The notes under the pieces were generated by a model. It made no database searches and was not told where the DNA came from. It worked only from the letters and a program-made list of their open reading frames with translations. Shown here one piece after another: positions 3,676 through 64,000 of a DNA stretch of 64,000 nt; position 1 is the stretch's first letter, and every line of letters begins with the position of its first letter. The stretch spans positions 124,001 to 188,000 of the IMG/VR virus record IMGVR_UViG_3300034117_001294; one strand, 5' to 3'. The position numbers and the translations under genes were made by a program.

Positions 3676-4610
3676 AAAGAGTAGTTTTTTACTTTGAGCC
3701 CAATTGGGCATTCGGCACAGTGCATTACGAGCTGTTCAAATATCTATGGGGACACGGATTTAACTGTCATCTGTTACCCTGGAATAAAAGTTACACTCGA
3801 GAAGAAATGTTGGAATTAAATTCCACAACTGATATTTTTGTAACTACCCCGCACGGATGGAGATTCTTAGGATATAATTACGGAACTGTTGCACCTGAAC
3901 AATGTGTTATTATAAGTCACGCTAAATTAGACATGACTGAACTTATTCATCATCACGGATATGAGGATTTTAAACGGTTCCGTAGATACGGTTGTGTCAG
4001 TCAATGGCTAGTTGATCTTAGCAAAGAGCTAGGTATCGAACGCCCGGCTGAACTAACGCCAGTAGCAATCAATTACAATACCTTCTACAGTACACCTAAC
4101 GATAATTTAAAAGTTGTAGGATATACAGGCAGCTTCCACAGAAAAGAAGAATTTGCACAGGATATGGTTGCGAGTGACTTAGCACAACCTAAGTATCATA
4201 AACGTGGTTGGTTAGTCGAAGAAGCAGTGAAACGTGCCGGATTAGAATTTAGAGTTGCCCAACAATACCATAATAGTTTTATCACTATGCCAGGATTCTA
4301 CAAAGGCATAGATGCTGTTATTGCAGCCAGTACAGAAGAAGGTGCCGGACTACCTGTTATGGAAGGCGGTGCAGCGGGCAAGCTGGTAATTGGTACTAAT
4401 GTTGGACACTGGGCTCAGAGAATTGGTGATGCAGGCGGATATGCTGTGCCTGTAGCAGAAGACGAATTCTTAGAAAAAACTGTGGAAATTTTAAGTTATT
4501 ATAAAGATAACCCTAACAAGTACAGACAACGATGCTTGGAAATTCAAGAACATGCTAAAAGTTACGATTGGAAGCACGTTATTGACAAGTGGGTTAACAT
4601 TTTATCTTAA
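3672..4610 (+). CDS. glycosyltransferase, GT4-like
   Basis: [27 protein letters not shown] matches the GT-B nucleotide-sugar binding motif. Confidence 0.7.
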
Positions 4611-20790: not shown

Positions 20791-23700
20791 ATGCCACTAA
20801 ATCAACAGATTATCAATATCGGTAGCGAACCAAACGATGGAACAGGCGACAGCGTCTATGCAGCTTTTCAGAAAGTTAACTCTAACTTTACAGACATCTA
20901 TACATTGTTAGGTTTTGGTGCTGGATTCAGCTTTTTAAGACTAAAGGAAGCTCCTAGCACATTAAGACCCAATGCTATTTTACAAGTTAACGCAGAAGGT
21001 AATAAATTTCTTAATAAAATTTTAGTAGCTGGCACAGGTATTAACATTGACTTTGTTACAAGTTCAACTGAAATCAGGATCGTTAATACTGCATCTAGCC
21101 TATCAAGTGATAAGAATCCAACACTAGCAGCAGACATCAGCGGTGAGAATGCATTTAGTATCATTAACATGGATAACACAGGTCCACATGCAGATTGGGA
21201 TGCAGTTAGTCGTAAGTGGGTTTATGAGAACTTTGTTAACCGTGACGGTATTACTAGATATGATAACACTAGTGTAAGTGAGAGCATATATGACGGAATG
21301 AGTACGATTCGGGATAATGTTGAATTATTAGTAAGTCCTACAAGTTCTACTCACATTGTTAACAAAGGATATGTTGACGAACTTGTTGACAACAGTGGTT
21401 TTGCAAGTCGCCAAAACTTCTTTGTTAGTTTAAGTGGTGACGATCATCAGTATTCTTTACCTAGCTATAAACGTGGGCGGGCCTTTGCCTATGCATTTAA
21501 AACTGTTAATCGTGCCGCAGAAGCAGCAGAACAATTTATTGCAGCAAGTCAAATTGTACTAGGACCGTACCAAAAAACTGTTTCGATGAGTAACGGCACA
21601 GCAAATCCTGTTGTTACTAACATAACCACTAGTACATTGCTAGACACTAGCTCTTTTGGTATCCGCTTAAGATTAACACTAGATCCAGCTAGTTTTAATA
21701 TTGGATCAGATCCCTTTATTAATAAAAGTATTTTCCCAGGAAACTACATCATTGGTGCAAGCAGTGAAGCAGTAGGTCTAGTTGAAGCTATTACACTCGA
21801 TGACGTGAATGGCTATGAATACTATGATATTACTCCAGTTGATTACGCTAAACCATATCGTATGGCAGTTGAACCAGAGCCGTTCAGCTATAATGCGTAT
21901 GTAACCAGTGGTGGTGAAATTACCGAAGTAGCGTTCTTATTAGACGTAGCAGACAGCATTGACATTCCAGATTTTTGGATTGGTTACAAATTTGTCATCA
22001 CTAATTCTAGTTACGGTGTCATAAGCTATGGATATATTTCTCGAATTATTCAAGAACTAGACGACGATCAAAACGTTAGAGACACTATTGTTGTTGAGTT
22101 TAGAGATGGTCTCGGATTACAAAATGGCGATGTTGTTGACTATGATAAGTGGCACGTCTATGCTGCCGACTTTGAATTAAACGAAGAGCTACAATGGGGC
22201 CAAAAACAGAACAAGAATCAATCTACTATTATGGTAGAGTCGGGTGAGCATAACGATCAATACCCAATTAAGGTTCCGGAAAACTGTTCTATCCGTGGTG
22301 ATGAATTCCGCCGAAGTGTTATTAAACCTGCACCTTTAGAAGGTACAAGACTTCCAGGTATTAGTAGTTCTAAATGGGCTAATACATACTTCTTTAGAGA
22401 TGCCCAAATTGACGGTATTATTGTAACACAATTAAACACTGCAACTGATTATGCAAGTGCAGCAGGTATTACTATCAGCTCAACTGATAATGACTCAGTT
22501 ACACAAACTGTTACTGTTACTGTAGATGCAGGAGTTGTTAGCACCAATTGGATTGGAAAGATTTTCAAAACTACCGGTGCAGTTTCTGCACAAGGTGAAG
22601 TTCGAGCCGTAAGTAGCAATACTTTTGCAGTTTCTCTAGCACAGAACGAAGTTAATTTTGAAAAGAGTGCTTACAATTATACAGTAGGCAATACTATTGC
22701 TTACGGTGCATGGCATATATATGAACCGTTCAAATACGGATATCATTACCTAAGAGATGCTAGTCGTCCAGTTAACACATTAACTACTCAGACTAACAGT
22801 GGTGGTTATAATAATGCCGGTTCTATTCTACTAGACAACCGAGAATTTATCAAAGCAGAATGTATTGGCTTCCTAAATGCTACATACCCTAGTTTTGTAT
22901 TTGATGAAGATAAATGTGCAAGAGACATCGGTATTATTGTTGATTCAATTGCATACGATTTAACTAACGGTGGAAATAATAGAACTATTAATGCAGGCGA
23001 TAGCTATCGAAATGTTGCAGTAGTTAAAGGATCCCAACTAGCAGAGACTGTTGCGGCTATTAACTATATTAACACTATTGGTCAACGAATTATTAAGAAT
23101 CAACAACCTGTTACTTCTTATCAAGCGGTCGAAGATCAAGTGTTCACTGACCCAGTTGGTGGTACACTAGTTAGTAGTGGGTCTGATTTAATCTTAGCAG
23201 ACTTAGTGCAGGCCTGCTCACGCATTGTCAACAACGATCCTGATTTTAATCCTCCCAAGTATAACGATCAAATGGATGTGTTCTTGATGAACGATGCAAC
23301 AATTAATCGATATATTAGTTGTCAAGGACACGGCGGCTTCATGAAAGTACTTGACCCAGACGGTCAAATTCTTGCCAAGTCCCCATATACTCAAACTGCT
23401 TCTAGCTTCTCTAAGAGCAAGAACAGGCACGTATTTGCAGGTGGTATGTTTATTGACGGATTCTCCGGCAATACTAAGATGACTCCTGCTAGCATTACTA
23501 CTGCATCAGGAACAGGCTATCCAGTAAGAATTAATTCAGCATTGACTACTGGCAGCATTGGACGTCCGAGTGTTGTGCCTGGTGAAGGATATATTCGTCC
23601 CCAAGTGCCTTGCTTCTTTGTTCATAGCGGTGTTACATACGAAGTCAGCTTTGTTAGTAACTTTAATCCAACAAACGGTACAGGTAGTTTAAACTTAAAT

Positions 23701-26700
23701 CCGTTACGTCCAGGTGGTATTGCCACTATTACTAATGCAGGAAACATTGCTACAGGATTTAAAGCTAACGCAGGAACAGTACCTGTAAGATTCAGTGCTC
23801 CGACACAGGCAGGTGGTCTAAATGCAACAGGTACTGCGGTGATTGGAGTTTCGGGTAATGTATCTAGTGTTTCTGTATCCTTCCCAGGATCAGGGTATAC
23901 AAACGGATTATTCACGTTCGGAACTACTCAAGGTTGCCCAAATATTGTTATTGGTGGTGCTCGAATTAGTTGGACTAGAAATAGTTCAGGTGCAATTACT
24001 GGTTACGAAATTATCGACGGTGGTGTTGGATACGCAGTTGGCACAGTTATTAATTTCCCAAGTTCCGGTGGTACAAGTGCTGCCGCAACAGTGGCCAGTG
24101 TAGACGGCAATGGTACAATTACTGCAATTACTATTGGAACAGCAGGCAGCGGCTATAATTCAGATCCGGCAGTAACATTTGGTACTGGGTTAGCATATGT
24201 GGCCACAGTTAAACCTGGATTCATTGTTACCGCAGCACATCCTTTACCAAGCGAGATCACATTAATCACAGCTGGTAATAGAAGTATGTTGGCTAACGAC
24301 TTCACACAGATCAACGACTTAGGCTACGGTATTTTTGCAACTAACGGCGGTTTAGTAGAAAACGTTTCCATGTTTACTTACTACTGCTATAGTGCGTACT
24401 ATTCTTTAAATGGTGCTCAATGTCGTAGTATTGCTGGTTCTACTTCCTACGGTCTAAATGGTCTTAAGTCAGAGGGGAGCGATCCAACAGAGGTTCCAAT
24501 TGCAGTTAGAAACAAACGTTCTACTAGCCAGATTGCCACAATTACCGCAGCAGGCACATACACAAACAAAGCTGAAGATGCAACCTTGTATGTAACTGGG
24601 TTGTCTTATGCACCTATTGCACAAAGTCAACTTGAAGTTAACCATAGTGGAACTGTTGTCCTTTATAATGTCAAGAGTGCAGTACAAGATACATTTGATA
24701 GTACCGTGTATTCTCTATCATTAGATGACGGGCAAGGACAGGGACTAAGGGCAGCTATTGCAAACGGTGAGAAAGCCACGTTACGCATATACTACAATCA
24801 AGAATTATTAGATGTAAATGCAGCAACATTAAGCCGTCCTAGTACTGTATTGACTTTAGACGAAGATCCAACATACGTATATCGTGTATTAAAATATTCA
24901 GACCTTGGCGGAGATACTGCACTTGCAGAAAGTGATACTCCTTACAACTATATTAACCTAACTCCGTGGACTGAGAGTAACGGTTTATACAGACAAGGCT
25001 TAGGCAAATTAACAATTACCAGCGGCGGTGCTGGATTTGGTTCGACTACCACAAACTATACTGCAACAATTCCTGCACCAAGTACCGCAGGAACTGCATC
25101 AGTTAATGGCACTGCAACAGATACTGATTTAATTACTATCAGTGGTGCAAGCGGCACTATAATGATAGGTAGTCGTGTAACTTTAACATCTGGTGGTGCT
25201 GATCCTAACGGTGCTGCAACTTATGTAACTTGGGTTAATTCTAGTTCTACACAGATTAGAGTTGACCGAACATGGACATGGCCTAACAGTACTGGCCTAA
25301 CATTCTCCGGAACACAGGCAGTTGGTTACGGCAAGGCTAACAGCAGTGGACAAATTTTTAAAGTTATTTTAACTAATCAGGGTGCAGGCTACGCCGGAAC
25401 CAGTGTTAGTAATATCACGATTACTGGAGGATCTGCCACAGCTACTGTAACAGCTTACCCAGATGGCGAAACTGGTAATAACAGGATCAAAGTTGTAGAC
25501 CTTGACGCAGATGATCAGGCAAGGATAGGTGCGGGATTAACTGCAAGTACTCCTTACTATTATATATTTGGTCATGCAGGTAATTTGTATAAAATTACAG
25601 ATTATATTAACAGCGACGAAACTTATAATGAATGGGGAGAAATTGTTGTTGAGAGAGTTAGTGATGGTGCTACATTACAACATCAAGTTTTGGCTACAGC
25701 ATTAAAAGCAGGTATTACATCTAATCAACCGGGTGATATTACTGTACGTATTTCTACAATGCGTGTTACCGGACACGACATGTTGAACGTAGGTACAGGA
25801 GGCTATGCTGACAGTAAGTATCCAAACGATTTATACGGCCCTCCAAGCAATCCTCCAGACTCGGCATTAGAAACTCAAGAGGTAGGAAAAGGTCGTGTAT
25901 ACTATGCCACTACTGACCAAGACGGTAACTTTAAAGTTGGTAAGTTCTTCAGCGTAGACCAAGGTCGCGGTACTGTGAGTATCAGTGCTCCGATTAGTTT
26001 AACTAACGTTGATGGCATTAGCTTTAAACGTGGGCAGACTCTTGTACAGGTGTTTAGCGTAGACGGTACGTTAGGCGGCAACAGTAATAACAGCGTTCCA
26101 ACTGAACGTGCTATACAAACATATGTTAATAGTAGATTAGGCCTAAACAGAAACAATACTACCGCAGGTGTCAGTCCAATCGGTAATGGATTCTTAGATC
26201 GTGGCGGCGTTTTAGAAATGCTCGATACTATCAAGATGGGCGACAACCGTATTGTTAATATGGCCGATCCAGCAGCTGATAAAGATGCTGTTAACAGACA
26301 ATGGGCTAACCTAAACTATATCAATACCAGTGGCGACACTATGGTAGGTACGTTAGTTACTCAAAAGTTAGAACCTAGTGCTAACTTAACATACGACATT
26401 GGTGAAAATGGCAAGCGATACGTTAATGTCTATGCGAACAGATTCCAAGGTACTGCAACTACTGCACAGAGCTTAGATGCTGCGGTAACTATTCAACTTA
26501 GCGGTGATGTTACTGGTAGTGCTAGTTTCTCTGGTGCAGGTGGTATCAACATTGTGACTACTATATCAAACAATAGTGTTGCATTAGGTACTGATACAAC
26601 TGGAGATTATGTATCTACTGGTGCAACTAGCGGATATGGTCTAAGCGGTAGCACAACAGGAGAAACTCAAACATTCACCGTTACTTCAAACGGTACAAGT

Positions 26701-27276
26701 TCTAATAGTGCAAGTACACTGGTCTTTAGAGACGGTAGTGGCAATTTTAGTGCAGGGACCGTTACTGCAACATTTAGCGGTAACATAACCGGTACTCCGA
26801 CTGTTCCGAGCATCACAAAGAGCGGCACTAACGGAACTGGCGACATTGGTCAAAGTGATAACTTGTTTGGAACAGTTTATGGCACTGCTTACTATGCAAA
26901 ATACGGTGACTTGGCAGAAAAATATTTGCCAGATGCACATTATGAGCCAGGTACTGTTGTAGTATTTGGCGGTGCAAAAGAAGTTACTGCTGCGGTAGAA
27001 TTCATGGACCGCAGGATCGCCGGCGTGGTTGCAACTAATCCGGCGTTCAAAATGAATGCCGAACTAGAAGGTGGCGTCTTTATTGCACTTACTGGTCGTG
27101 TTCCATGTAAAGTTGTAGGTAAAGTACGCAAAGGCGATATGTTAATTTCTAGTGGTGCTCCGGGTGTTGCAACTGCTGAAAAGAATCCTGCAATGGGTTC
27201 AGTAATTGGCAAAGCATTAGAAGATTATGATAGTCAAACAATTGGCGTCATTGAAGTTGTAGTAGGGAGAATTTAA
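20791..27276 (+). CDS. giant tail-fibre/baseplate protein with C-terminal intramolecular chaperone
   Basis: N-terminal INIGSEPNDGTGD (T4 gp9/gp10-like), beta-helix-like IRGDEFRRS segment, KCARDIG..VD repeat, GSGY repeats, C-terminal YGDLAEKY...GRVPCKV. Confidence 0.75.
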   Translation: MPLNQQIINIGSEPNDGTGDSVYAAFQKVNSNFTDIYTLLGFGAGFSFLRLKEAPSTLRPNAILQVNAEGNKFLNKILVAGTGINIDFVTSSTEIRIVNTASSLSSDKNPTLAADISGENAFSIINMDNTGPHADWDAVSRKWVYENFVNRDGITRYDNTSVSESIYDGMSTIRDNVELLVSPTSSTHIVNKGYVDELVDNSGFASRQNFFVSLSGDDHQYSLPSYKRGRAFAYAFKTVNRAAEAAEQFIAASQIVLGPYQKTVSMSNGTANPVVTNITTSTLLDTSSFGIRLRLTLDPASFNIGSDPFINKSIFPGNYIIGASSEAVGLVEAITLDDVNGYEYYDITPVDYAKPYRMAVEPEPFSYNAYVTSGGEITEVAFLLDVADSIDIPDFWIGYKFVITNSSYGVISYGYISRIIQELDDDQNVRDTIVVEFRDGLGLQNGDVVDYDKWHVYAADFELNEELQWGQKQNKNQSTIMVESGEHNDQYPIKVPENCSIRGDEFRRSVIKPAPLEGTRLPGISSSKWANTYFFRDAQIDGIIVTQLNTATDYASAAGITISSTDNDSVTQTVTVTVDAGVVSTNWIGKIFKTTGAVSAQGEVRAVSSNTFAVSLAQNEVNFEKSAYNYTVGNTIAYGAWHIYEPFKYGYHYLRDASRPVNTLTTQTNSGGYNNAGSILLDNREFIKAECIGFLNATYPSFVFDEDKCARDIGIIVDSIAYDLTNGGNNRTINAGDSYRNVAVVKGSQLAETVAAINYINTIGQRIIKNQQPVTSYQAVEDQVFTDPVGGTLVSSGSDLILADLVQACSRIVNNDPDFNPPKYNDQMDVFLMNDATINRYISCQGHGGFMKVLDPDGQILAKSPYTQTASSFSKSKNRHVFAGGMFIDGFSGNTKMTPASITTASGTGYPVRINSALTTGSIGRPSVVPGEGYIRPQVPCFFVHSGVTYEVSFVSNFNPTNGTGSLNLNPLRPGGIATITNAGNIATGFKANAGTVPVRFSAPTQAGGLNATGTAVIGVSGNVSSVSVSFPGSGYTNGLFTFGTTQGCPNIVIGGARISWTRNSSGAITGYEIIDGGVGYAVGTVINFPSSGGTSAAATVASVDGNGTITAITIGTAGSGYNSDPAVTFGTGLAYVATVKPGFIVTAAHPLPSEITLITAGNRSMLANDFTQINDLGYGIFATNGGLVENVSMFTYYCYSAYYSLNGAQCRSIAGSTSYGLNGLKSEGSDPTEVPIAVRNKRSTSQIATITAAGTYTNKAEDATLYVTGLSYAPIAQSQLEVNHSGTVVLYNVKSAVQDTFDSTVYSLSLDDGQGQGLRAAIANGEKATLRIYYNQELLDVNAATLSRPSTVLTLDEDPTYVYRVLKYSDLGGDTALAESDTPYNYINLTPWTESNGLYRQGLGKLTITSGGAGFGSTTTNYTATIPAPSTAGTASVNGTATDTDLITISGASGTIMIGSRVTLTSGGADPNGAATYVTWVNSSSTQIRVDRTWTWPNSTGLTFSGTQAVGYGKANSSGQIFKVILTNQGAGYAGTSVSNITITGGSATATVTAYPDGETGNNRIKVVDLDADDQARIGAGLTASTPYYYIFGHAGNLYKITDYINSDETYNEWGEIVVERVSDGATLQHQVLATALKAGITSNQPGDITVRISTMRVTGHDMLNVGTGGYADSKYPNDLYGPPSNPPDSALETQEVGKGRVYYATTDQDGNFKVGKFFSVDQGRGTVSISAPISLTNVDGISFKRGQTLVQVFSVDGTLGGNSNNSVPTERAIQTYVNSRLGLNRNNTTAGVSPIGNGFLDRGGVLEMLDTIKMGDNRIVNMADPAADKDAVNRQWANLNYINTSGDTMVGTLVTQKLEPSANLTYDIGENGKRYVNVYANRFQGTATTAQSLDAAVTIQLSGDVTGSASFSGAGGINIVTTISNNSVALGTDTTGDYVSTGATSGYGLSGSTTGETQTFTVTSNGTSSNSASTLVFRDGSGNFSAGTVTATFSGNITGTPTVPSITKSGTNGTGDIGQSDNLFGTVYGTAYYAKYGDLAEKYLPDAHYEPGTVVVFGGAKEVTAAVEFMDRRIAGVVATNPAFKMNAELEGGVFIALTGRVPCKVVGKVRKGDMLISSGAPGVATAEKNPAMGSVIGKALEDYDSQTIGVIEVVVGRI

Positions 27277-55541: not shown

Positions 55542-58500
55542 ATGAATTTAAATGAGCTGTTTAGTAACAAAAAGAAAGTTGTGTCAGAAGGTGGAAATTT
55601 ATCGCTACCTGGCGGGCACGATGCACAGCAAATCGATCTTAAAGTGCATAATCGTTCCTACATTGTACCAATTTTAGATACACTGTTGATTAATATCAAC
55701 AGTTCTTTTGCAAAAAAATACAAAAAACCTTTGTGGAATCCGCAACTACTACAGAGTAAACAATTTCTAAGTGGAAGTAGTCTACACTTCTTTAATACCA
55801 AAGGTATTACTGACCAACAATTTGTAGAAAAGAAACCAAAAGTAGGCGACATTGACACACAGGTCAACAAAGAAAACGAACAAGAATTAGAACAATGGTT
55901 ATCTGCTAGTCAAGGTAAGATGGTAGGCAATGCCAAGTTCTTAGGTTTCCAAAGAGGCAACGAACAATTCTCCAGTTTATGGGAGCTACAAGACCCACCT
56001 ATTAAAGTGCAAATTGACTTAGAATTTGTAGAGTTTGACAAAGACGAACCCACTCCATGGAGCAAATTTAGTCATAGCAGCAGCTGGGATGATCTAAACG
56101 CAGGAGTTAAGGGTGTATTCCACAAGTTTTTAATTCAAAGTCTAGCATCATTAAGTAGAAAAGATTTCTTACTACGCAAAGCTGTAGGACGAGGCAAGGC
56201 CAAAGAAATACAAGATGTTCCTACAACTGATAACATGGTCAGCTTTGCAGTATCCAGTAAAGAAGGCGGCGGCCTACGTGCCAAATACGAACCAGTATTA
56301 GATGCAAACGGACAGCCTTTAATTAGTAACGGTATGCCAGTTATGCAGGCATTACCAGCAACTGGTTACGAACAAGACATTGGAAAGATTTTTGGATCTA
56401 TCTTTGGTTCGAGATTAAATCCTAAACAAGCTGCACAATTAGAAAGCAAGTACTGGAGCTTTACTGGTTTAGTTGATGCAATGAATACGCTAGTAACTCC
56501 AGAAGAAAAGCAGTCAGTGTTGTCTGCATTTATTGACAAAATATTTGGCAAGGGTGCCCAAGGTCTTTACAAAGGCGATCCAGAGCGTGATAGTGCAGAA
56601 AAATCTGCTGCATTGGATTTAATGATCAATAAATTAGGAGTTCAGACACCTAGTGATCTTGAACAGATGAAGCAGCAATACAAGGCATCGTACAGAGTTA
56701 CTGCTGAAAGTTTGCAAGAAGCAGAAGTTAAAGCACAGTTCCGTAAGAACATGCCACACCTACGTGATCTAAAGCCTATTGACTTTTTAGATCTATTGGA
56801 CGAGATTCACGATGGTAATGGTAATTTTAAATTACAAAACATTCCGTTAAATGTTAAGATTGACGGATTTGGCGGACGTTTTGGTAAGGATGCAGAAGGC
56901 AAGCCTTTTATGGCTACCAGCAATACTCCTCCAAGATATAAAGCAGGATTTGTACAATATCATCAAGACAAGGGCACAACTGATCCTGAAATTTTAGGTC
57001 GTGCAGAAAAGTTTGATGAACTGTTTAATGAAATGATGAACGCTATCAAATTGGTTGATAGCAAGCTAGGTGCAGACTTTCTTGTTAATAAACAGGTCAC
57101 CTGTGAAGTATTGTTCTTGCCGTTTGCAGCCGAAACGTCAGAGGGCAAATTAAAATTTGTAGGAATTCAATACGATAAGTTTCCTCCAGGTGTAGAATTA
57201 GTTCTTGTGCCGTTCCGTGTAGTAGATGCTAGTTCCGGAGAAGATGTACCTGATGCTAACGATGTTGTTACAAGTCTAAGCAAATTAGGCGGACAAGGAA
57301 GTGTTAGATTCCTTAGTAATAGTCTAGTACAAAAAGACGGACTTGATGTTACTGAGATTATTAATCCTTTAGATAATATCGAAGAACTAAAACAAATTGT
57401 ATCTGACACAGCAGGCAAAAGAGATCGTGCCAGTTTGCAACTAAGACGCGAAGTAGAAGAAAAATTAATGCCTGTTAAGATTGCACTGGAAAAGGCAATT
57501 GATGCAGATCCTAACATTATTGGCAAAGATATATTAGGTCAAGACTACGAAGGTATTGTTATCAACAGTCGTCTTGGCCCTATCAAAGTTACTAGCCAAC
57601 AACAAAAAGATATTATTACCCAAAAGAACGCTGCCAAAGCTGCCGCTCGTGCAGAACAGCCGCGTGGTGAAAACAAAACTGCGGTAGTTGCTATCGGTAG
57701 CTTTGTGGGACACAAAGGTCATCAACAGCTATTTGGTCTTACAATTAATAAGGCAAAAGAAGTCAGCGGCGATCCTTATCTGTTTATGGGCAGTGCAGTA
57801 GGTGCAGACGATCCTATTCCAGTTGCTGACAAAATTAAAACTTGGAAACAATTGTATCCCGAGTATGCAGGCAATATCAGTGCTGTAACACAAGAGGGCG
57901 GATCTTTGATGCAAAAGATCAAGCACGAGTTAATCAACCCGTTGCCAGGCAAGCCACCACGCTACGATAATGTTATTATTATGGTAGGTGAAGATCAGGC
58001 CAAGATGCCTATCGCACAGGCCCTAATGAAGGCAGTTAATAAGTTTCCTGGATACGAGCATGTTAAGGTACAATTAGAAGTTACTCCTAGAGGAACTGGC
58101 ATGAGCTTTACTAAGCTACGTAACGTGTTAAAAACTGGAGATGAGCAACAAGCATTCCAAATGTGGAATGATGCATTCAATGGCGGCCAGGATGGAGCAA
58201 AACCATTACCGTCACAATGGATTAAACATTTAATGGATGTGTCAAAGACCGGAATGAGCACACCTCAACCAAAGCCAGCAGTTAAGAAGCCTGCTGTACT
58301 ACCTACTCCGCAGACTGTTCAACAACCTGCACTAGGTGAAATGAGATTGTTTAATGCACTAATGAGTCCTAAAAAAATTGTAAATGAAAAGACTATTGAA
58401 GAACGTAAACGTAAAAAAAGTAAAGGTGCAGCATGGGGTCCAGGGCCATATGGTTGGTACGGATTTGATGCAGGTTATAGTGGTAACGGTGGAGATGGTG

Positions 58501-60350
58501 GTAGTGATGGTGGTGAGAGCATGAATCAAGAAAACTTTGCTGATAGTCGTAATCCACAAGACAACAGCAACAGTAAACGGCAAATGTTAAAAATTGCATC
58601 ATTAAACAATATTAAAGATGTGAACAAAATTAATGCAGGGCAGATGTTAAAATTGCCTAACGGCACAACTTATAAAGTAATGCCTGGAGATACCCTGTCT
58701 ACAATTGCGGCAAGACAAGTGAAAGATCAATCTTCTCCAATGCCCCAACCCTCAGTTAAACAAGGTCCAAACTCTAACATAGATCAAACGACAAGAGATA
58801 AAGCACAGGCATTTGTTGGTCAACAAAAACCAGAAATGGGTGGTGGCAGGGGGGTCGTTAATCCAGCAACCGTCCGGCCCGACGAACCAACCCAAACCGG
58901 AGTTCGAAGTGGTCCTAACACAAACATAGATCAACCAGCAAGAGATAGGGCCAAAGCGGCTGTTACTAAAATTTCTAGTGAAGACGATATCATGAATATG
59001 GTTAAAGATCATGAAGGTGTAAAAAATAAACCATACCAAGATACAAAAGGATTATGGACTGTAGGAGTAGGTCACTTAATTGGTGATGGCAAGACTCTCC
59101 CTTCAGAGTGGAAAAGAACATTTTCAGACGCAGAAATAATGAATCTGTTTAAAAAGGATTATCAGCATCATAAACAGGCAGCAGAAAAAATTCCTGGATT
59201 TAGTAATTTAAACATGAACGGACAGGCTGCTCTAATTGATCTAACATTTAACATGGGTCCAAGATGGTGGAAGGCTTGGCCTAATTTTACAAAAGCCATG
59301 CAAGCAGGAAACATAGATCAAGCAGCAAATGCATTAAAAAATAGTGCATGGTATTCACAAGTTGGTAGAAGAGCACCTAAAATTGTATCTCTTTTACAGA
59401 GCGGAGATCGATCTGTAGCAGAAAACTTTGCGGATGGACGTAATCCACAAGACAAGGGCGACAGTAAACGTCACGGCGTTCCTACAAAATCGTCAGTGAG
59501 CAATCTACGTAAAGTAGCTAAACAAGGCGGCCGTAAAGGACAATTAGCACATTGGATGGCAAATATGAAAGCAGGTAAAGCAAAAGCTAAGAATGAAGAC
59601 TTCAACGGCGAATACGACGACGAAGCAGGAATGGCACAGAGTAATCTACGCACAATGGCTCGTGCAGTTGATGGTTTATTAAAAACTATTAAGAGCAACG
59701 ATAACTTGCCAGAATGGGGACAAGAAAAGATTGCCAAAGCAGAAATGATGTTGGTCAGTGTCTGGGATTATTTGTTAAGCCAAAAAGAAATGGGCATGGA
59801 TCCTAAGATCAACGAAAGCAAGGCTGTAGAAAGTTTAAGACAGATTGTCGCAGAGTTGTCCAATGAAAAATTAGGACAATATAAAAAGGCCGCCGGTGAT
59901 CAAGCAACTGCCGCAGACAAAGCGGGCGACTATGCTAAGGGTCATAAACGTTTCAAAGGAATTGTTAAAGCAACTAACAAGCAGTTTGATAATGATGCTA
60001 AAAAGCATAGAGAGCAAGGTATGGCGGAGGCTGGCAGCAATGCTATAGATACTGTATCTAAACGCTTAACTGATCCTAAAGATGGAATGACAGCCAAACT
60101 TAGAGCAGCTGGTGATAAGAAACGCGATAGTCAGTACATGGGCACACAGATTGCTAAGAATGATCGAACCAGTAAAGACGAATGGGGCAACTTAAAAGAA
60201 AAGATTAAAGGTGCAGACGGCAAAGCCTGTTGGAAAGGTTATAAGTACGCAGGTACTAAGAACGGTAAAGACAAGTGTGTGCCAATTGGCGAAGCCTACG
60301 AACTTGAAATGACCCTGGCTATTCTAAAGCTGTTTGAAAGTAATAAATGA
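55542..60350 (+). CDS. 1602-aa multidomain polyprotein: pol-beta-like NTase, ligase-like adenylation domain, HxGH nucleotidyltransferase, LysM, GH24 lysozyme, short head-protein modules
   Basis: GSS..VGDID; KIDG/CEVLF/EGIVI/IKV; GHKGH...VGEDQ...MSFTKLR; LysM YKVMPGDTLSTIA; HEGVKNKPYQDTKGLWT (E-x8-D-x5-T). Confidence 0.7.
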   Translation: MNLNELFSNKKKVVSEGGNLSLPGGHDAQQIDLKVHNRSYIVPILDTLLININSSFAKKYKKPLWNPQLLQSKQFLSGSSLHFFNTKGITDQQFVEKKPKVGDIDTQVNKENEQELEQWLSASQGKMVGNAKFLGFQRGNEQFSSLWELQDPPIKVQIDLEFVEFDKDEPTPWSKFSHSSSWDDLNAGVKGVFHKFLIQSLASLSRKDFLLRKAVGRGKAKEIQDVPTTDNMVSFAVSSKEGGGLRAKYEPVLDANGQPLISNGMPVMQALPATGYEQDIGKIFGSIFGSRLNPKQAAQLESKYWSFTGLVDAMNTLVTPEEKQSVLSAFIDKIFGKGAQGLYKGDPERDSAEKSAALDLMINKLGVQTPSDLEQMKQQYKASYRVTAESLQEAEVKAQFRKNMPHLRDLKPIDFLDLLDEIHDGNGNFKLQNIPLNVKIDGFGGRFGKDAEGKPFMATSNTPPRYKAGFVQYHQDKGTTDPEILGRAEKFDELFNEMMNAIKLVDSKLGADFLVNKQVTCEVLFLPFAAETSEGKLKFVGIQYDKFPPGVELVLVPFRVVDASSGEDVPDANDVVTSLSKLGGQGSVRFLSNSLVQKDGLDVTEIINPLDNIEELKQIVSDTAGKRDRASLQLRREVEEKLMPVKIALEKAIDADPNIIGKDILGQDYEGIVINSRLGPIKVTSQQQKDIITQKNAAKAAARAEQPRGENKTAVVAIGSFVGHKGHQQLFGLTINKAKEVSGDPYLFMGSAVGADDPIPVADKIKTWKQLYPEYAGNISAVTQEGGSLMQKIKHELINPLPGKPPRYDNVIIMVGEDQAKMPIAQALMKAVNKFPGYEHVKVQLEVTPRGTGMSFTKLRNVLKTGDEQQAFQMWNDAFNGGQDGAKPLPSQWIKHLMDVSKTGMSTPQPKPAVKKPAVLPTPQTVQQPALGEMRLFNALMSPKKIVNEKTIEERKRKKSKGAAWGPGPYGWYGFDAGYSGNGGDGGSDGGESMNQENFADSRNPQDNSNSKRQMLKIASLNNIKDVNKINAGQMLKLPNGTTYKVMPGDTLSTIAARQVKDQSSPMPQPSVKQGPNSNIDQTTRDKAQAFVGQQKPEMGGGRGVVNPATVRPDEPTQTGVRSGPNTNIDQPARDRAKAAVTKISSEDDIMNMVKDHEGVKNKPYQDTKGLWTVGVGHLIGDGKTLPSEWKRTFSDAEIMNLFKKDYQHHKQAAEKIPGFSNLNMNGQAALIDLTFNMGPRWWKAWPNFTKAMQAGNIDQAANALKNSAWYSQVGRRAPKIVSLLQSGDRSVAENFADGRNPQDKGDSKRHGVPTKSSVSNLRKVAKQGGRKGQLAHWMANMKAGKAKAKNEDFNGEYDDEAGMAQSNLRTMARAVDGLLKTIKSNDNLPEWGQEKIAKAEMMLVSVWDYLLSQKEMGMDPKINESKAVESLRQIVAELSNEKLGQYKKAAGDQATAADKAGDYAKGHKRFKGIVKATNKQFDNDAKKHREQGMAEAGSNAIDTVSKRLTDPKDGMTAKLRAAGDKKRDSQYMGTQIAKNDRTSKDEWGNLKEKIKGADGKACWKGYKYAGTKNGKDKCVPIGEAYELEMTLAILKLFESNK
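58530..59473 (+). repeat. 53-bp direct repeat pair (58530-58582 and 59421-59473)
   Basis: 46/53 identical by hand alignment; both encode ENFAD(S/G)RNPQD..(N/D)SKR. Confidence 0.85.
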
Positions 60351-60993: not shown

Positions 60994-62177
60994 GAATTAA
61001 ACAACTTTTAGAATCAGCAACTACTGGAGGCACAAGCTCAGCATCAGTAGCAACAGTTGCAAAAGGCAGTAAGGGAATGATTAAACGTCAGAAACCTACT
61101 GACAATGCATTGGATAGTGGAAAGTTGTTTCAAGAAACTAACGCTGCGGAAGGCAAGGAAGATAAGATTGCTCAACTAAAGAAAGACCATGACACCGCAG
61201 TGCATTGGAGCAAGAATGAAACAAGCCCACAAAAGCGTGAGGCTGCTCGTCAAAAGGCTGAAAAGATCAAGCGTCACTTAGATACACAATACAAGCAAGG
61301 TGTGGCGGAGGTTAGTGATGCTACGCTAACCAGTTATCTAACAAAATTAGATAAAGATAATCTTAAACACAGAATGGATCCCACAAAACGCAGTGACACA
61401 AAACGCATGAAAAGTGGTCCTAATTTTGTTAAAGCGTTTACCAAATTGGATAATAAAAAGCAAGGTGTGGCGGAGGCCACAGGTGACGAAAAATTTGATA
61501 AATCAATGAGAAAAATGACTGGAAAAATTACTCCAGGCGATGCTGACGAGATGTGGCCGACACAAGAATTTGAACCAGTTGATCTTGATCCATCATACTT
61601 GCCAAGTATGGAAAAATACAAGGCAAAATTATTTCCATTGGCTTACCAATACTGGACTGACGGCGACAATGCAGATGAATTAAGAGCATTAGGATGGGAA
61701 CCCGATTATGGCGACGACTATGTTATGGTGGTGCTGTCTGGCATCGGACACGACGGTCACATTCAATACGACAAATATGATTTTGATGCTGAAGATGAAA
61801 ACAATGAAGGTGTGGCGGAGGTAGCACCGCCGGGAGCCAAAGCCGAACGCATGGTCAAGCATATTAAAAAGGGATATGCTAAAGATGGTAAGTTAACTAA
61901 AACTGAAAAAAGCAAGGCATACGGTGCTGCATGGAAAGCACACAATGCCGGCAAAGTAGAAGAACAAAGTGTAGAAGAAAACAAGAAAGGTGTACGTGCT
62001 GTGAAACATGCAGTTAAGCCTAGAAACTTTGTTGCCAAGAACGCAGTACAAAGTGGTGCAGGTGCTCACAAAGATAAAAAGAAAGCACAAAAGCAAGGTG
62101 ATGTAAAACACAAGGCTAAAGAGCCAGCTTACGAATCTAAGCTATGGGCAGCATTAGATCGAAGAATTATCAAGTAA
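60990..62177 (+). CDS. modular putative internal head polyprotein
   Basis: MRIKQLLES start; modules separated by (Q/E)GVAE. Confidence 0.6.
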   Translation: MRIKQLLESATTGGTSSASVATVAKGSKGMIKRQKPTDNALDSGKLFQETNAAEGKEDKIAQLKKDHDTAVHWSKNETSPQKREAARQKAEKIKRHLDTQYKQGVAEVSDATLTSYLTKLDKDNLKHRMDPTKRSDTKRMKSGPNFVKAFTKLDNKKQGVAEATGDEKFDKSMRKMTGKITPGDADEMWPTQEFEPVDLDPSYLPSMEKYKAKLFPLAYQYWTDGDNADELRALGWEPDYGDDYVMVVLSGIGHDGHIQYDKYDFDAEDENNEGVAEVAPPGAKAERMVKHIKKGYAKDGKLTKTEKSKAYGAAWKAHNAGKVEEQSVEENKKGVRAVKHAVKPRNFVAKNAVQSGAGAHKDKKKAQKQGDVKHKAKEPAYESKLWAALDRRIIK

Positions 62178-62593
62178 TGAAAATCATAGACCTATTAGAG
62201 GATGTAAATTCAAAACCTGATTTTATGAAAATACTTCAGGAGTTTCTTCCCTTTGCAGTCAATGAACTTAAATTAAAATCTGTTCCAAAAATTAAAATGC
62301 ATTTACGTATTGGCAGCGTAGATGATCAACCTAGTTTTGGTAGTTTTAACAGTGAAACTAAAATAATCAATATTGCAATTGAAGATAGACATCCTTTAGA
62401 TATTTTAAGAACTCTTGCACACGAGATGGTACATTACAAACAAAACGAAGAAACTGGACTGAAGCCAGGTGCGGGTGCTACCGGTAGCCCTGAAGAAAAT
62501 CAAGCACACGAACTAGCTGGTATTGTGATGCGTAAATTTAATAAAGCGAACCCTGAATTTTTTAATACCGACGCTGTTAATCTAGAAGAATAA
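62177..62593 (+). CDS. HExxH zincin-like protein with CTS-like N-terminus
   Basis: MKIIDLLED; LAHEMVHYKQ...EENQA; ATG at 62177. Confidence 0.55.
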   Translation: MKIIDLLEDVNSKPDFMKILQEFLPFAVNELKLKSVPKIKMHLRIGSVDDQPSFGSFNSETKIINIAIEDRHPLDILRTLAHEMVHYKQNEETGLKPGAGATGSPEENQAHELAGIVMRKFNKANPEFFNTDAVNLEE

Positions 62594-62594
62594 A

Positions 62595-63230
62595 ATGAGT
62601 TTCTTAGTTGCAAACTTACCTCCGGTGCATTGTTTTGTACGCAAAGAATTTTTGTATGATTTTAAGTCAGGACAGGGCGAATACGAACCGTGCATATGGG
62701 TGTCAATCAAAAGCCTGCGTAGTCAAGCATTCCGTATAGAAAGCTATTTGCCCAGATACGGAGCACTGTACGACAAACTACCTTTACATGCCTATGTAAG
62801 CAGAAACACCGATTTAGAGCCAGACAAGTTTGTACCACTCGATACACTGCAAATATGGGACTGCTTCAGCTATGATATTGCTGTAATACAAAAGGCGTTC
62901 TTACGTAATCTTTCCTGCGAGTTCTATGCCAAGGATCGTCAGCTACACAAAGGCGACTATATGTTTACCGTAGACAATGCTAGTCCAGATCTCAATGTTA
63001 TAGACACTAGCTACTCAGAGTGGCCCGAAGATCACAAAAGTTTTAACTTTATACAACTAGATAATGGACAATATGCCGCACAGCCCAATAATCGTTGCAG
63101 ATTCTTTGATGCAGCCAGTAACCCTAAAGAAATGTTATTTCCAGATTTTAAAGTTGCTACAAAAAAATGGGTTGTAGAAACAAACCCCAAATGGCGATTG
63201 GGCGACTCCGATACAGTAACTTACGAATAA
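62595..63230 (+). CDS. conserved phage hypothetical protein
   Basis: VANLPPVHCFVRKEFLYD...NGQYAAQPNNR. Confidence 0.6.
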   Translation: MSFLVANLPPVHCFVRKEFLYDFKSGQGEYEPCIWVSIKSLRSQAFRIESYLPRYGALYDKLPLHAYVSRNTDLEPDKFVPLDTLQIWDCFSYDIAVIQKAFLRNLSCEFYAKDRQLHKGDYMFTVDNASPDLNVIDTSYSEWPEDHKSFNFIQLDNGQYAAQPNNRCRFFDAASNPKEMLFPDFKVATKKWVVETNPKWRLGDSDTVTYE

Positions 63231-63234
63231 AAGT

Positions 63235-63263
63235 TTGACACTGTGGTTGCATTAGTATATACT
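63235..63263 (+). promoter_or_regulatory. sigma70-type promoter
   Basis: TTGACA-17 bp-TATACT. Confidence 0.75.
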
Positions 63264-63286
63264 TAATGTTCACAGGAGATTAATTT

Positions 63287-63556
63287 ATGTCAAAAGCATT
63301 CGGTGCACCAGAGCAAGCAAAGATTAAGCAGATTGTCGCAGAAGGTATGACAGTTATGCAGGAAATTCAAGACTTAACAGAAGGATTGAATGAAACAATC
63401 AAAGCTGTTGCAGAGGAACTTGAAGTCAAGCCAAGCGTTATCAAGAAGGCTATCAAGATTGCACAAAAAGATACATGGGATCAAGTGTTCCGTGAGTTTG
63501 ATGATTTGGAAACTATTGTTGATATTAGCGGTCACAGTTTTCGTAAGGAAGATTAA
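63287..63556 (+). CDS. T4 DsbA/GapR-like small DNA-binding protein
   Basis: Helical pattern ...IQDLTEGLNETIKAVAEELEVKPSVIKKAIKIA. Confidence 0.55.
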   Translation: MSKAFGAPEQAKIKQIVAEGMTVMQEIQDLTEGLNETIKAVAEELEVKPSVIKKAIKIAQKDTWDQVFREFDDLETIVDISGHSFRKED

Positions 63557-63843
63557 TGGGCCTTGTCCAAAAAATATATAATTGGGCGAGAACTGATTAT
63601 CGAGAGTGGCCAACTCGATTTTCATTAGAAATTGCTGCCTGGCTAATGAGTCTCGGATGTTCCTTAACATTGGCCGCAGGAGCAACTGATCCTTTATTTT
63701 TCTATCTATATCCTATATTCATTTTACAATGTGCAATATTCGGGTGGGCTGCTTGGACTCGTAAGAGTACTGGCATGGTTGCAAACTATCTACTATTAGT
63801 CACTATTGACATTGTTGGATACGTTAGACTATTAAATATATAA
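63556..63843 (+). CDS. three-TM membrane protein
   Basis: Hydrophobic segments. Confidence 0.55.
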   Translation: MGLVQKIYNWARTDYREWPTRFSLEIAAWLMSLGCSLTLAAGATDPLFFYLYPIFILQCAIFGWAAWTRKSTGMVANYLLLVTIDIVGYVRLLNI

Positions 63844-63853
63844 GAGAAAGGTT

Positions 63854-63907
63854 TGATCAGCCATAAATGATCATGTTGGTATTTGTAGGCCACAAACTAC
63901 AAAGGAG
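63854..63907 (+). promoter_or_regulatory. twin-hairpin leader (candidate translational operator)
   Basis: TGATCA-GCCATAAA-TGATCA and TTTGTAG-GCCACAAA-CTACAAA abutting GGAG. Confidence 0.55.
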
Positions 63908-63913
63908 AAAAAA

Positions 63914-64000
63914 ATGAGCTACGTCGATTCAATGTGGGATCGCGACAAGGACGTTATTCGCGTCGTTGAGCGTGATCCCAAAAAAGGCAGAATCTTTCAA
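63914..64000 (+). CDS. N-terminus of probable family-B DNA polymerase (runs off window)
   Basis: MSYVDSMWDRDKDVIRVVERD... resembles jumbo-phage PolB N-termini as I recall them; only 29 codons visible. Confidence 0.5.
   Translation, partial: MSYVDSMWDRDKDVIRVVERDPKKGRIFQ

What the first reader, a model, noticed from the sequence alone, without database searches (positions are those of the whole stretch)
63854..63907. Twin hairpins with conserved GCCAYAAA loops directly upstream of the polymerase RBS
Seen: two stems of different sequence (TGATCA/TGATCA and TTTGTAG/CTACAAA) carry near-identical 8-nt loops, GCCATAAA and GCCACAAA. The second stem abuts GGAG. Different stems with the same loop imply selection on structure. 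Known: T4 gp43 represses its own translation by binding a short stem with an 8-nt loop just 5' of its SD. Inference: a tandem autogenous operator for this polymerase, or ssDNA hairpins recognised by a primase or replication protein.
Basis: partly seen in the sequence, partly recalled or inferred. Interest (0 to 1): 0.7.

Follow-up and report, generated by a model that had tools for sequence, protein, structure and literature searches.

The report
Twin pseudoknot leader of phage polymerase
Just upstream of the DNA polymerase gene of an uncultured freshwater jumbo phage lie two small RNA pseudoknots, conserved in over 100 related phages, that touch the ribosome-binding site and most likely control how much polymerase is made, as in phage T4 but with a different, undescribed RNA architecture.

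Summary
Two hairpins with 8-nt loops GCCAUAAA and GCCACAAA lie at 63854-63903. The second abuts GGAG, and an 889-aa family-B DNA polymerase starts at 63914.

The pairing is not chance. No such pair arose in 200 shuffled genomes. 116 of 118 distinct polB leaders of relatives (polymerase 71-100% identical) carry both hairpins, with strong compensatory change in both stems.

New here: each hairpin is preceded by GGY, which pairs with loop bases 1-3 (RCC). AGU co-occurs with GCU at three separate places on the polymerase tree. Each unit therefore looks like a compact H-type pseudoknot with an A-rich third loop.

The twin motif occurs once per genome, always 5' of the polB ribosome-binding site. 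In a sister clade a single unit has a stem strand that supplies the first Gs of the Shine-Dalgarno. Rfam has no match, and a model of the motif does not match the T4 or RB49 operators.

Best reading: a new structured translational operator of polB mRNA, most likely bound by the polymerase itself as in T4 gp43. That binding is untested. Rivals are a riboswitch, another protein, or a constitutive structural element. A single-stranded DNA role is unlikely.

The parts
63235..63263 (+). Sigma-70-like promoter (TTGACA-17-TATACT) that probably drives the operon: 89-aa gene, 95-aa gene, twin motif, polB
   Evidence: It matches 11 of 12 consensus positions. A TTGAC-N17-19-TAnAnT site lies about 680 nt upstream of polB in 44 of 65 distinct related loci. 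Function is inferred.
63287..63556 (+). 89-aa gene, first cistron, resembling a transcription regulator or DNA-binding protein
   Evidence: It matches phrog_12534 at 3.9e-17 and phrog_639 'transcriptional regulator' at 1e-6. It is syntenic next to polB even in phage Phosso, where it is annotated as a DNA binding protein.
63556..63843 (+). 95-aa hydrophobic protein gene; its stop codon TAA is at 63841-63843, 6 nt before the first unit
   Evidence: ORF list and sequence. The gene is absent in L062 and L080 while the RNA motif stays with polB.
63850..63873 (+). Unit 1, a proposed H-type pseudoknot: S1 GGU 63850-52 with GCC 63860-62; L1 U 63853; S2 UGAUCA 63854-59 with UGAUCA 63868-73; L3 AUAAA 63863-67
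   Evidence: The core 4 bp of the stem are paired in all sequences, with 23-50 double changes per pair. S1 combinations are GGU/GCC 86, GGC/GCC 9, AGU/GCU 5 and GGU/ACC 3, with one U.U exception. AGU/GCU occurs at 3 separate places on the polymerase tree.
63874..63877 (+). Linker of variable sequence; the distance from loop 1 start to loop 2 start is held at 27-30 nt (mode 29)
63878..63903 (+). Unit 2, a proposed H-type pseudoknot: S1 GGU 63878-80 with GCC 63889-91; L1 A 63881; S2 UUUGUAG 63882-88 with CUACAAA 63897-903; L3 ACAAA 63892-96
   Evidence: The stem covaries, with 33-55 double changes at its three inner pairs. GGY is present 5-9 nt upstream of GCC in every unit 2. S1 of unit 2 is conserved but shows no compensatory change.
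63904..63907 (+). Shine-Dalgarno GGAG, directly abutting the 3' strand of unit 2
   Evidence: In all leaders the SD core starts 4-8 nt after loop 2, which places it at or inside the end of S2. In the sister clade the S2 3' strand CGG or UGG supplies the first Gs of the SD.
63914..64000 (+). Start of polB (889 aa; continues beyond the window to genome position 190583)

Best explanation
The element is a cis-acting translational operator in the intercistronic leader of polB mRNA. It is built from two tandem compact H-type pseudoknots. Each has a 3-bp helix GGY:RCC, a 1-3 nt first loop, a second helix of 4-7 bp stacked on the first, and a 5-nt A-rich third loop (AYAAR, or NNAAR in unit 2) that can lie in the minor groove of the GC helix. 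The second pseudoknot ends at, or includes, the first bases of the Shine-Dalgarno. When the fold is locked by a bound factor, the 30S subunit cannot engage and polymerase synthesis falls. The most likely factor is the polymerase itself when it is not occupied on DNA, as with T4, RB69 and RB49 gp43. The fixed 27-30 nt spacing of the two units suggests that both are bound together. Shown here: the two hairpins, their conservation and covariation, sense-strand RNA character, exclusive association with polB and fixed register to the SD. Supported but not proven: the pseudoknot pairing. Inferred: repression, and the identity of the binder.
For: The twin motif is present in 116 of 118 distinct leaders with polymerase 71-100% identical. 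Covariation is strong: 15 of 16 pairs show double changes, 87% of cells are paired, no shuffle of 500 reached the observed score, and slid controls give 17-47% paired. An unfitted MAFFT alignment and RNAalifold agree. For the pseudoknot, the first set (62 leaders) has a complementary 5' triplet in 124 of 124 units. In the pooled set the only exception is one U.U in L211, and AGU-GCU pairs arose at three separate places on the polymerase tree. Model R1 finds one copy per genome in ten related records of 87-349 kb, always at polB; in the two sister-clade records the hit at polB is absent or marginal, because R1 models the twin form. A loose pattern scan of the window's own genome gives 10 hits against 7.4 expected by chance. 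The motif follows the SD, not the upstream gene. In L062, L080 and L320 a small ORF coupled to polB is inserted, and the motif sits before that ORF's SD. In the sister clade a single unit GGC-N3-CCG-GCC-AYAAA-CGG|AG places part of the SD inside S2, with CCG/CGG exchanging for CCA/UGG. The precedent is a homologous enzyme: T4 gp43 represses its own mRNA through a hairpin with an 8-nt loop next to the SD, with loop determinants UAAC/UAAA/CAAC (PMC3014915; sequences read). The third loops here read AUAAA, ACAAA and AUAAG. No RegA homologue was found in five related genomes.
Against: The resemblance to the T4 loop rests on a short A-rich string and may be coincidence. Model R1 does not match the T4 or RB49 operators, and the review states that no pseudoknot is known for gene 43. 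Many relatives with polymerase 61-66% identical, and the cultured relatives Phosso, Atu_ph07 and Vibrio 2.275.O, lack the motif, so it is dispensable. S1 is only 3 bp and its covariation rests on one variable position with 3-5 events. Unit 2 S1 never covaries. The window's fold energy is unremarkable.
Confidence: 0.5

Rival explanations
1. A tandem riboswitch. Each small pseudoknot is an aptamer for a metabolite, for example a nucleotide-related compound, and ligand binding closes the fold over the SD.
For: The topology is the same as in small pseudoknot riboswitches that hide the SD: an H-type fold with an A-rich third loop in the groove of a GC helix. Tandem aptamers are known. Some nucleotides are invariant (the second G, the middle C, and AA). 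In the sister clade the SD lies inside S2.
Against: Rfam gives no match even at E up to 10. Each unit is only about 25 nt with about 8 conserved bases, which is smaller than any known aptamer as far as I know. The first two positions of the unit 2 third loop vary freely. The motif controls a single gene, with no metabolic or transport genes involved. No TGT/DpdA gene was found and only partial QueC-like matches, so there is no evident link to 7-deazaguanine.
Confidence: 0.12
2. An operator for a different protein: an unidentified phage-encoded RNA-binding repressor or activator, or a host factor such as ribosomal protein S1.
For: The fixed 27-30 nt spacing of two similar sites fits a dimeric binder. 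The two small genes upstream are co-transcribed and syntenic.
Against: The motif occurs once per genome, so a dedicated regulator would serve one gene. No RegA homologue was found. The 89-aa neighbour resembles DNA-binding transcription regulators rather than RNA binders.
Confidence: 0.15
3. A constitutive structural element with no ligand: an insulator that keeps the SD single-stranded, a standby platform or enhancer for 30S binding, or a barrier against 5'-to-3' or endonucleolytic mRNA decay in the intercistronic region.
For: The SD itself is predicted to be unpaired in the window. The element lies between cistrons of an operon. Structured elements 5' of an SD can enhance translation.
Against: A plain insulator would not need invariant loop bases, a pseudoknot, two copies at fixed spacing, or a position unique to polB among hundreds of genes. 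In the sister clade the fold consumes part of the SD, which would inhibit rather than help.
Confidence: 0.18
4. The hairpins act as single-stranded DNA, as a primase or replication-protein recognition site, or at the DNA level as a promoter or operator.
For: They lie next to a replication gene. TGATCA is a DNA palindrome in the window.
Against: G.U outnumbers A.C by 111 to 15 in paired cells, so pairing is kept only on the sense strand. The stem sequence, including TGATCA, is freely replaced. The register to SD and ATG is strict. There is one copy per genome. No promoter-like site overlaps it.
Confidence: 0.03

Closest known systems
Autogenous translational operator of T4-type DNA polymerase (gene 43 of T4, RB69, RB49)
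   Same: Both lie in the leader of a homologous family-B replicative polymerase and are probably carried on an early transcript. Both have a short stem enclosing 8 nt directly 5' of the SD, or overlapping it in RB49. Both have an A-rich loop core: T4 AAUAACUC, RB49 GUAAAU, and here GCCAUAAA or GCCACAAA. Both are lost in some relatives (PMC3014915).
   Different: There are two units at fixed spacing instead of one hairpin. There is evidence for a pseudoknot, which has not been reported for gene 43. The conserved GGY...GCC has no T4 counterpart. The model of the motif does not match the T4 or RB49 operators. The polymerases are only distantly related. Binding by the polymerase is untested here.
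Gene 32 mRNA pseudoknot of T2, T4 and RB69 (autoregulation by the single-strand DNA-binding protein)
   Same: Both are compact H-type pseudoknots in the leader of a phage replication gene used for translational control. The geometry is similar: a single-nucleotide first loop crossing a 6-7 bp second helix (from my own knowledge of the T2 NMR structure; the review confirms two coaxial helices).
   Different: The gene 32 knot lies about 67 nt upstream and nucleates cooperative binding along an unstructured A+U-rich stretch. Here the knots abut the SD, come in tandem, and precede polB rather than an SSB gene.
Small pseudoknot riboswitches that sequester the SD (for example preQ1-I), and tandem-hairpin riboswitches (guanidine-II)
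   Same: They share the H-type fold with an A-rich loop along a GC helix and with the SD at or in the 3' strand. Guanidine-II also has two similar small units side by side.
   Different: No Rfam family matches. The conserved nucleotides differ. The units are smaller. The gene controlled is a polymerase. No ligand is known.
thrS and rpsO translational operators of E. coli
   Same: They show the same logic: a structured operator directly 5' of the SD. thrS has two similar stem-loops bound by a dimer, and rpsO has a pseudoknot that traps the 30S subunit (from my own knowledge; rpsO is mentioned).
   Different: The sequences, proteins and organisms are unrelated. The comparison is an analogy only.

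Membership tests
T4-type gp43 translational operator | Lies in the 5' leader of a family-B replicative DNA polymerase gene, next to or overlapping the ribosome-binding site | tested here: met
   polB is confirmed. The SD starts 4-8 nt after loop 2 in all leaders.
T4-type gp43 translational operator | A single hairpin (5-bp stem, 8-nt loop) with a UAAC or UAAA loop core, and sequence similarity to the T4, RB69 or RB49 operators | tested here: not met
   There are two units, probably pseudoknots. The AUAA/ACAA core resembles the T4 core, but model R1 finds nothing at the T4 or RB49 operators.
T4-type gp43 translational operator | The polymerase binds the RNA specifically and represses its own translation | not testable with these tools
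   The complex prediction was not folded. EMSA, toeprinting and reporter assays are needed.
Gene 32-type pseudoknot operator | An H-type pseudoknot in the leader | tested here: inconclusive
   S1 pairing is supported by AGU-GCU, GGC-GCC and GGU-ACC combinations with only one mismatch, a U.U. The helix is only 3 bp and there is no structure probing.
Gene 32-type pseudoknot operator | The downstream gene encodes the ssDNA-binding protein, and the knot lies far upstream followed by an unstructured A+U-rich tract | tested here: not met
   The downstream gene is polB, and the knot abuts the SD.
Known riboswitch classes (Rfam 15) | A match to a curated covariance model | tested here: not met
   cmscan of 62000-64000 at E up to 10 returned only three chance-level hits elsewhere.
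Known riboswitch classes (Rfam 15) | Binding of a small-molecule ligand | not testable with these tools
   In-line probing or ITC is needed.
Intrinsic terminator or attenuator | A GC-rich stem followed by a U tract | tested here: not met
   No terminator-like site on the + strand lies in 63800-63915. The stems are followed by a linker or by GGAG.

The most novel reading that the evidence does not exclude
The units are the smallest natural aptamers yet seen: a tandem pseudoknot riboswitch, specific to an abundant group of freshwater jumbo phages, that couples synthesis of the viral DNA polymerase to a metabolite signal such as a nucleotide pool. It would be the first riboswitch known to control a replicative polymerase.
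Probability: 0.1. Interest if true: 0.9.

Novelty: new variant of a known kind. Interest (0 to 1): 0.62.

Why it matters
Autogenous translational control of a replicative polymerase is a classic but narrowly documented mechanism, known from T4, RB69 and RB49. It gave rise to the first SELEX experiment, yet no structure of the RNA-protein complex exists. This motif would extend that logic to a very abundant, uncultured lineage of freshwater jumbo phages: thousands of polymerase variants at 83% identity or more, on contigs up to about 380 kb. Its RNA architecture is different and better constrained, with over 100 natural sequence variants that already amount to a mutational scan. The RNA is small (about 55 nt) and may be tractable for structural work on how a family-B polymerase, or another factor, reads RNA. 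It is also a ready candidate for a new Rfam family, and a marker of polB starts in metagenomic annotation.

Tried and rejected
1. Rfam, in both gathering and E-value modes, found nothing.
2. The complex prediction of PolB with leader RNA was counted but not folded. It gives no evidence either way.
3. I looked for more copies. The twin model finds one hit per genome. A loose single-unit pattern gives 10 hits against 7.4 in shuffles. A weak second hit in G006 lies antisense inside a 372-aa ORF and is chance.
4. The named relatives Phosso, Atu_ph07 and Vibrio 2.275.O have no motif in their polB leaders.
5. A search for RegA (PF01818) as an alternative repressor found none. The control genomes also gave nothing, so this is weak evidence.
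6. To test a link to preQ1 or 7-deazaguanine, I searched for TGT/DpdA and QueC. TGT is absent and QueC gives only partial matches.
7. In metatranscriptomes, four RNA runs hold only short contigs over 63222-63611 and from 63883 onward. There is no end mapping and nothing across the motif.
8. Mutual information over all column pairs put only the stem pairs on top. There is no covariation between the two units or between loops.
9. The window's leader holds a 16-codon ORF (63867-63917) whose stop overlaps the polB ATG. Its ATG comes from the AUAAA-UGAUCA junction and is absent in most relatives, so I rejected it as a feature.
10. A sigma-70 promoter inside the motif was considered. None was found.

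Full report
**1. What is in the window**

- The stop codon of a 95-aa ORF is at 63841-63843.
- Hairpin 1 is TGATCA / GCCATAAA / TGATCA, 63854-63873.
- A 4-nt linker follows, then GGT and one more base.
- Hairpin 2 is TTTGTAG / GCCACAAA / CTACAAA, 63882-63903.
- GGAG lies at 63904-63907 and ATG at 63914.

The minimum-free-energy fold gives exactly these two hairpins, although the energy of the 91-nt stretch is not unusual (z = -0.19).

The window is positions 124001-188000 of a 228,849-bp IMG/VR virus record with 39.6% G+C, rated about 65% complete. Reading on in the genome, the ORF is 889 aa with Pfam DNA_pol_B and DNA_pol_B_exo1.

Its nearest named relatives are:
- the jumbo phages Phosso and Atu_ph07, at 47-51% identity;
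- Rak2/121Q/GAP32-like phages, at about 42%.

**2. Is it more than chance?**

Within the genome, GCCAYAAA is not enriched (9 copies on both strands). There are 114 perfect hairpins of this format, but only this neighbouring pair shares a loop. None of 200 shuffled genomes produced such a pair.

The comparative evidence is decisive. IMG/VR holds hundreds of contigs with a polymerase 71-100% identical, and the protein collection holds thousands.
- All 62 distinct leaders of the first set carry both hairpins.
- 79 of 80 loci of a second set are hit by the covariance model R1 directly before polB.
- Pooled, 116 of 118 distinct leaders carry the twin motif.

The covariation tests agree:
- On an unfitted MAFFT alignment, the four core pairs of each stem are paired in practically all sequences, with 23-31 double changes each.
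- RNAalifold predicts both hairpins de novo, with compensatory changes at all 8 pairs.
- On the model-fitted alignment of 100 sequences, 15 of 16 pairs show double changes and 87% of cells pair. Slid controls give 17-47%, and no shuffle of 500 reached the observed covariation.
- Mutual information ranks the seven stem pairs on top.

**3. New anatomy: pseudoknots**

In the first set (62 leaders), every one of the 124 units is preceded by a triplet complementary to loop positions 1-3. The triplet lies 6-7 nt upstream in unit 1 and 5-9 nt upstream in unit 2.

In unit 1 the combinations are GGU/GCC 86, GGC/GCC 9, AGU/GCU 5 and GGU/ACC 3. No mismatched combination occurs apart from one U.U. The G>A change always comes with C>U, and it occurs at three separate places on the polymerase tree, each beside a GGU/GCC sister.

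This fits an H-type pseudoknot with these parts:
- S1: GGY:RCC, 3 bp
- L1: 1-3 nt
- S2: 4-7 bp
- No nucleotide between S2 and the S1 3' strand, so the helices can stack
- L3: 5 nt, with two invariant As

L3 reads AYAAN in unit 1 and NNAAN in unit 2.

The caveats are that S1 is short, only one of its positions gives true double changes, S1 of unit 2 is invariant, and there are no probing data.

**4. RNA or DNA, and on which strand?**

In paired cells G.U occurs 111 times and A.C 15 times. Pairing is therefore kept on the sense strand only, as expected for mRNA and not for a DNA cruciform or the opposite strand.

A sigma-70-like promoter (TTGACA-17-TATACT, 63235-63263) precedes the 89-aa gene. 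It recurs about 680 nt upstream of polB in 44 of 65 related loci. The motif therefore probably sits between cistrons of the operon: 89-aa gene, 95-aa gene, polB.

Metatranscriptome contigs touch the operon but do not resolve the leader.

**5. Association with polB and the SD**

R1 finds one copy in the window's genome (78.5 bits) and one in each of seven related records of 87-327 kb that carry the twin form, always at polB. A loose single-unit pattern is at chance level elsewhere.

The spacing is tightly held:
- Loop 1 start to loop 2 start: 27-30 nt.
- End of loop 2 to the SD core: 4-8 nt, so the SD begins at or within the end of S2.

Where the 95-aa gene is missing (L062, L080), the motif stays. 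Where a small ORF coupled to polB is inserted (L062, L080, L320), the motif sits before that ORF's SD.

**6. Wider distribution**

In clades with polymerase 61-66% identical, three states occur:
- Twin units with AGU...GCU (L096, L117).
- A large sister clade with a single unit, GGC-N3-CCG-GCC-AYAAA-CGG|AG. Its S2 3' strand supplies the first Gs of the SD. S2 covaries (CCG/CGG against CCA/UGG). The unit is preceded by a different covarying hairpin.
- Many leaders with no motif, often with polB overlapping the upstream gene.

Phosso, Atu_ph07 and Vibrio phage 2.275.O have none. The SD-proximal unit is thus the conserved core. The element is lineage-specific and dispensable.

**7. Mechanism**

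A stable fold ending at or in the SD, unique to one gene, with invariant loop bases and two copies at fixed distance, points to a translational operator read by a trans-acting factor.

The closest precedent is gp43 of T4, RB69 and RB49. There the polymerase binds a hairpin next to the SD of its own mRNA, with UAAC, UAAA or CAAC in the loop as determinants (PMC3014915). I read the operators from the phage genomes:
- T4: AGCCU-AAUAACUC-GGGCU followed by AUAAAC and the SD.
- RB49: a hairpin with loop GUAAAU that overlaps the SD.

The third loops here (AUAAA, ACAAA, AUAAG) share that A-rich core, but the string is short. R1 does not match those operators, and no pseudoknot is reported for gene 43. 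I therefore treat this as working like the gp43 operator, not as a member of that family.

My confidence is split as follows:
- About 0.8 that it is a cis-regulatory RNA acting on polB translation.
- About 0.5 for the full model with PolB as the ligand.

The rivals are:
- a riboswitch (0.12);
- another protein (0.15);
- a ligand-free structural element (0.18);
- a DNA-level role (0.03).

No RegA homologue was found, and there is no 7-deazaguanine pathway that would suggest a preQ1-like ligand.

**8. Novelty**

No Rfam family matches. Four of the literature searches bear on novelty and found no description of a structured polB leader in these phages.

The element is a new RNA motif with a familiar regulatory logic, so I rate it a new variant of a known kind. 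It is well supported as a real conserved structure. Its function remains inferred.

Noticed in passing
window 63235-63263: Strong sigma-70-like promoter (TTGACA-17-TATACT) before the 89-aa gene. It is conserved at the same distance from polB in most relatives, which suggests polB is read by host RNA polymerase as part of an early operon.
   Followed up: partly
window 63287-63556: The 89-aa protein matches phrog_12534 and phrog_639 ('transcriptional regulator'). It stays next to polB even in phage Phosso, where it is annotated as a DNA binding protein, and in loci that lack the 95-aa gene.
   Followed up: partly
L062:2842-2877, L080:2878-3003, L320 (about 60 nt before polB), L245 (R1 hit about 145 nt upstream of polB): Small ORFs have been inserted independently between the RNA motif and polB. 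Two sizes were read: 11 aa in L062 and 41 aa in L080. In L080 and L320 the stop overlaps the polB ATG (ATGA). The motif then precedes the small ORF's SD.
   Followed up: partly
L250-L329, about 60 to 30 nt before polB (for example L282, L291): The sister-clade leaders carry a second conserved element, GAGUC-[GCUC/GUUC/GCCC]-variable loop-[GAGC/GAAC/GGGC]-AUGAAUCAY, with a covarying 4-5 bp stem. It replaces unit 1. Its function is unknown.
   Followed up: no
window 62595-63230: The 211-aa protein matches phrog_3704 at 2.4e-86. That family is labelled 'ferredoxin' (auxiliary metabolic or host-takeover category).
   Followed up: no
window 20791-27276 and 55542-60350: Two very long ORFs of 2161 aa and 1602 aa lie on the + strand. 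Nearly all genes in the window are on the + strand.
   Followed up: no
window 63867-63917: A 16-codon ORF inside the leader has a stop that overlaps the polB ATG. Its start codon is made by the loop-stem junction and is not conserved in relatives, so it is probably fortuitous.
   Followed up: yes
G000:C1:100661-100843 and 3955-4137 (outside the window): Two ORFs of about 210 aa match only the C-terminal 60 residues of the QueC family (30 and 19 bits). No TGT/DpdA gene was found.
   Followed up: no
L086:1501-4470 (Atu_ph07): The Atu_ph07 polymerase is annotated as two adjacent CDS (1698 and 1254 nt) covering one homologous polymerase, so the gene is split or interrupted.
   Followed up: no
L087:1335-1395 (Vibrio phage 2.275.O): A long perfect hairpin (14-bp stem, 6-nt loop) sits about 100 nt before the tblastn-aligned start of this phage's polB and overlaps the start of the annotated CDS. 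It is unrelated to the motif studied here.
   Followed up: no
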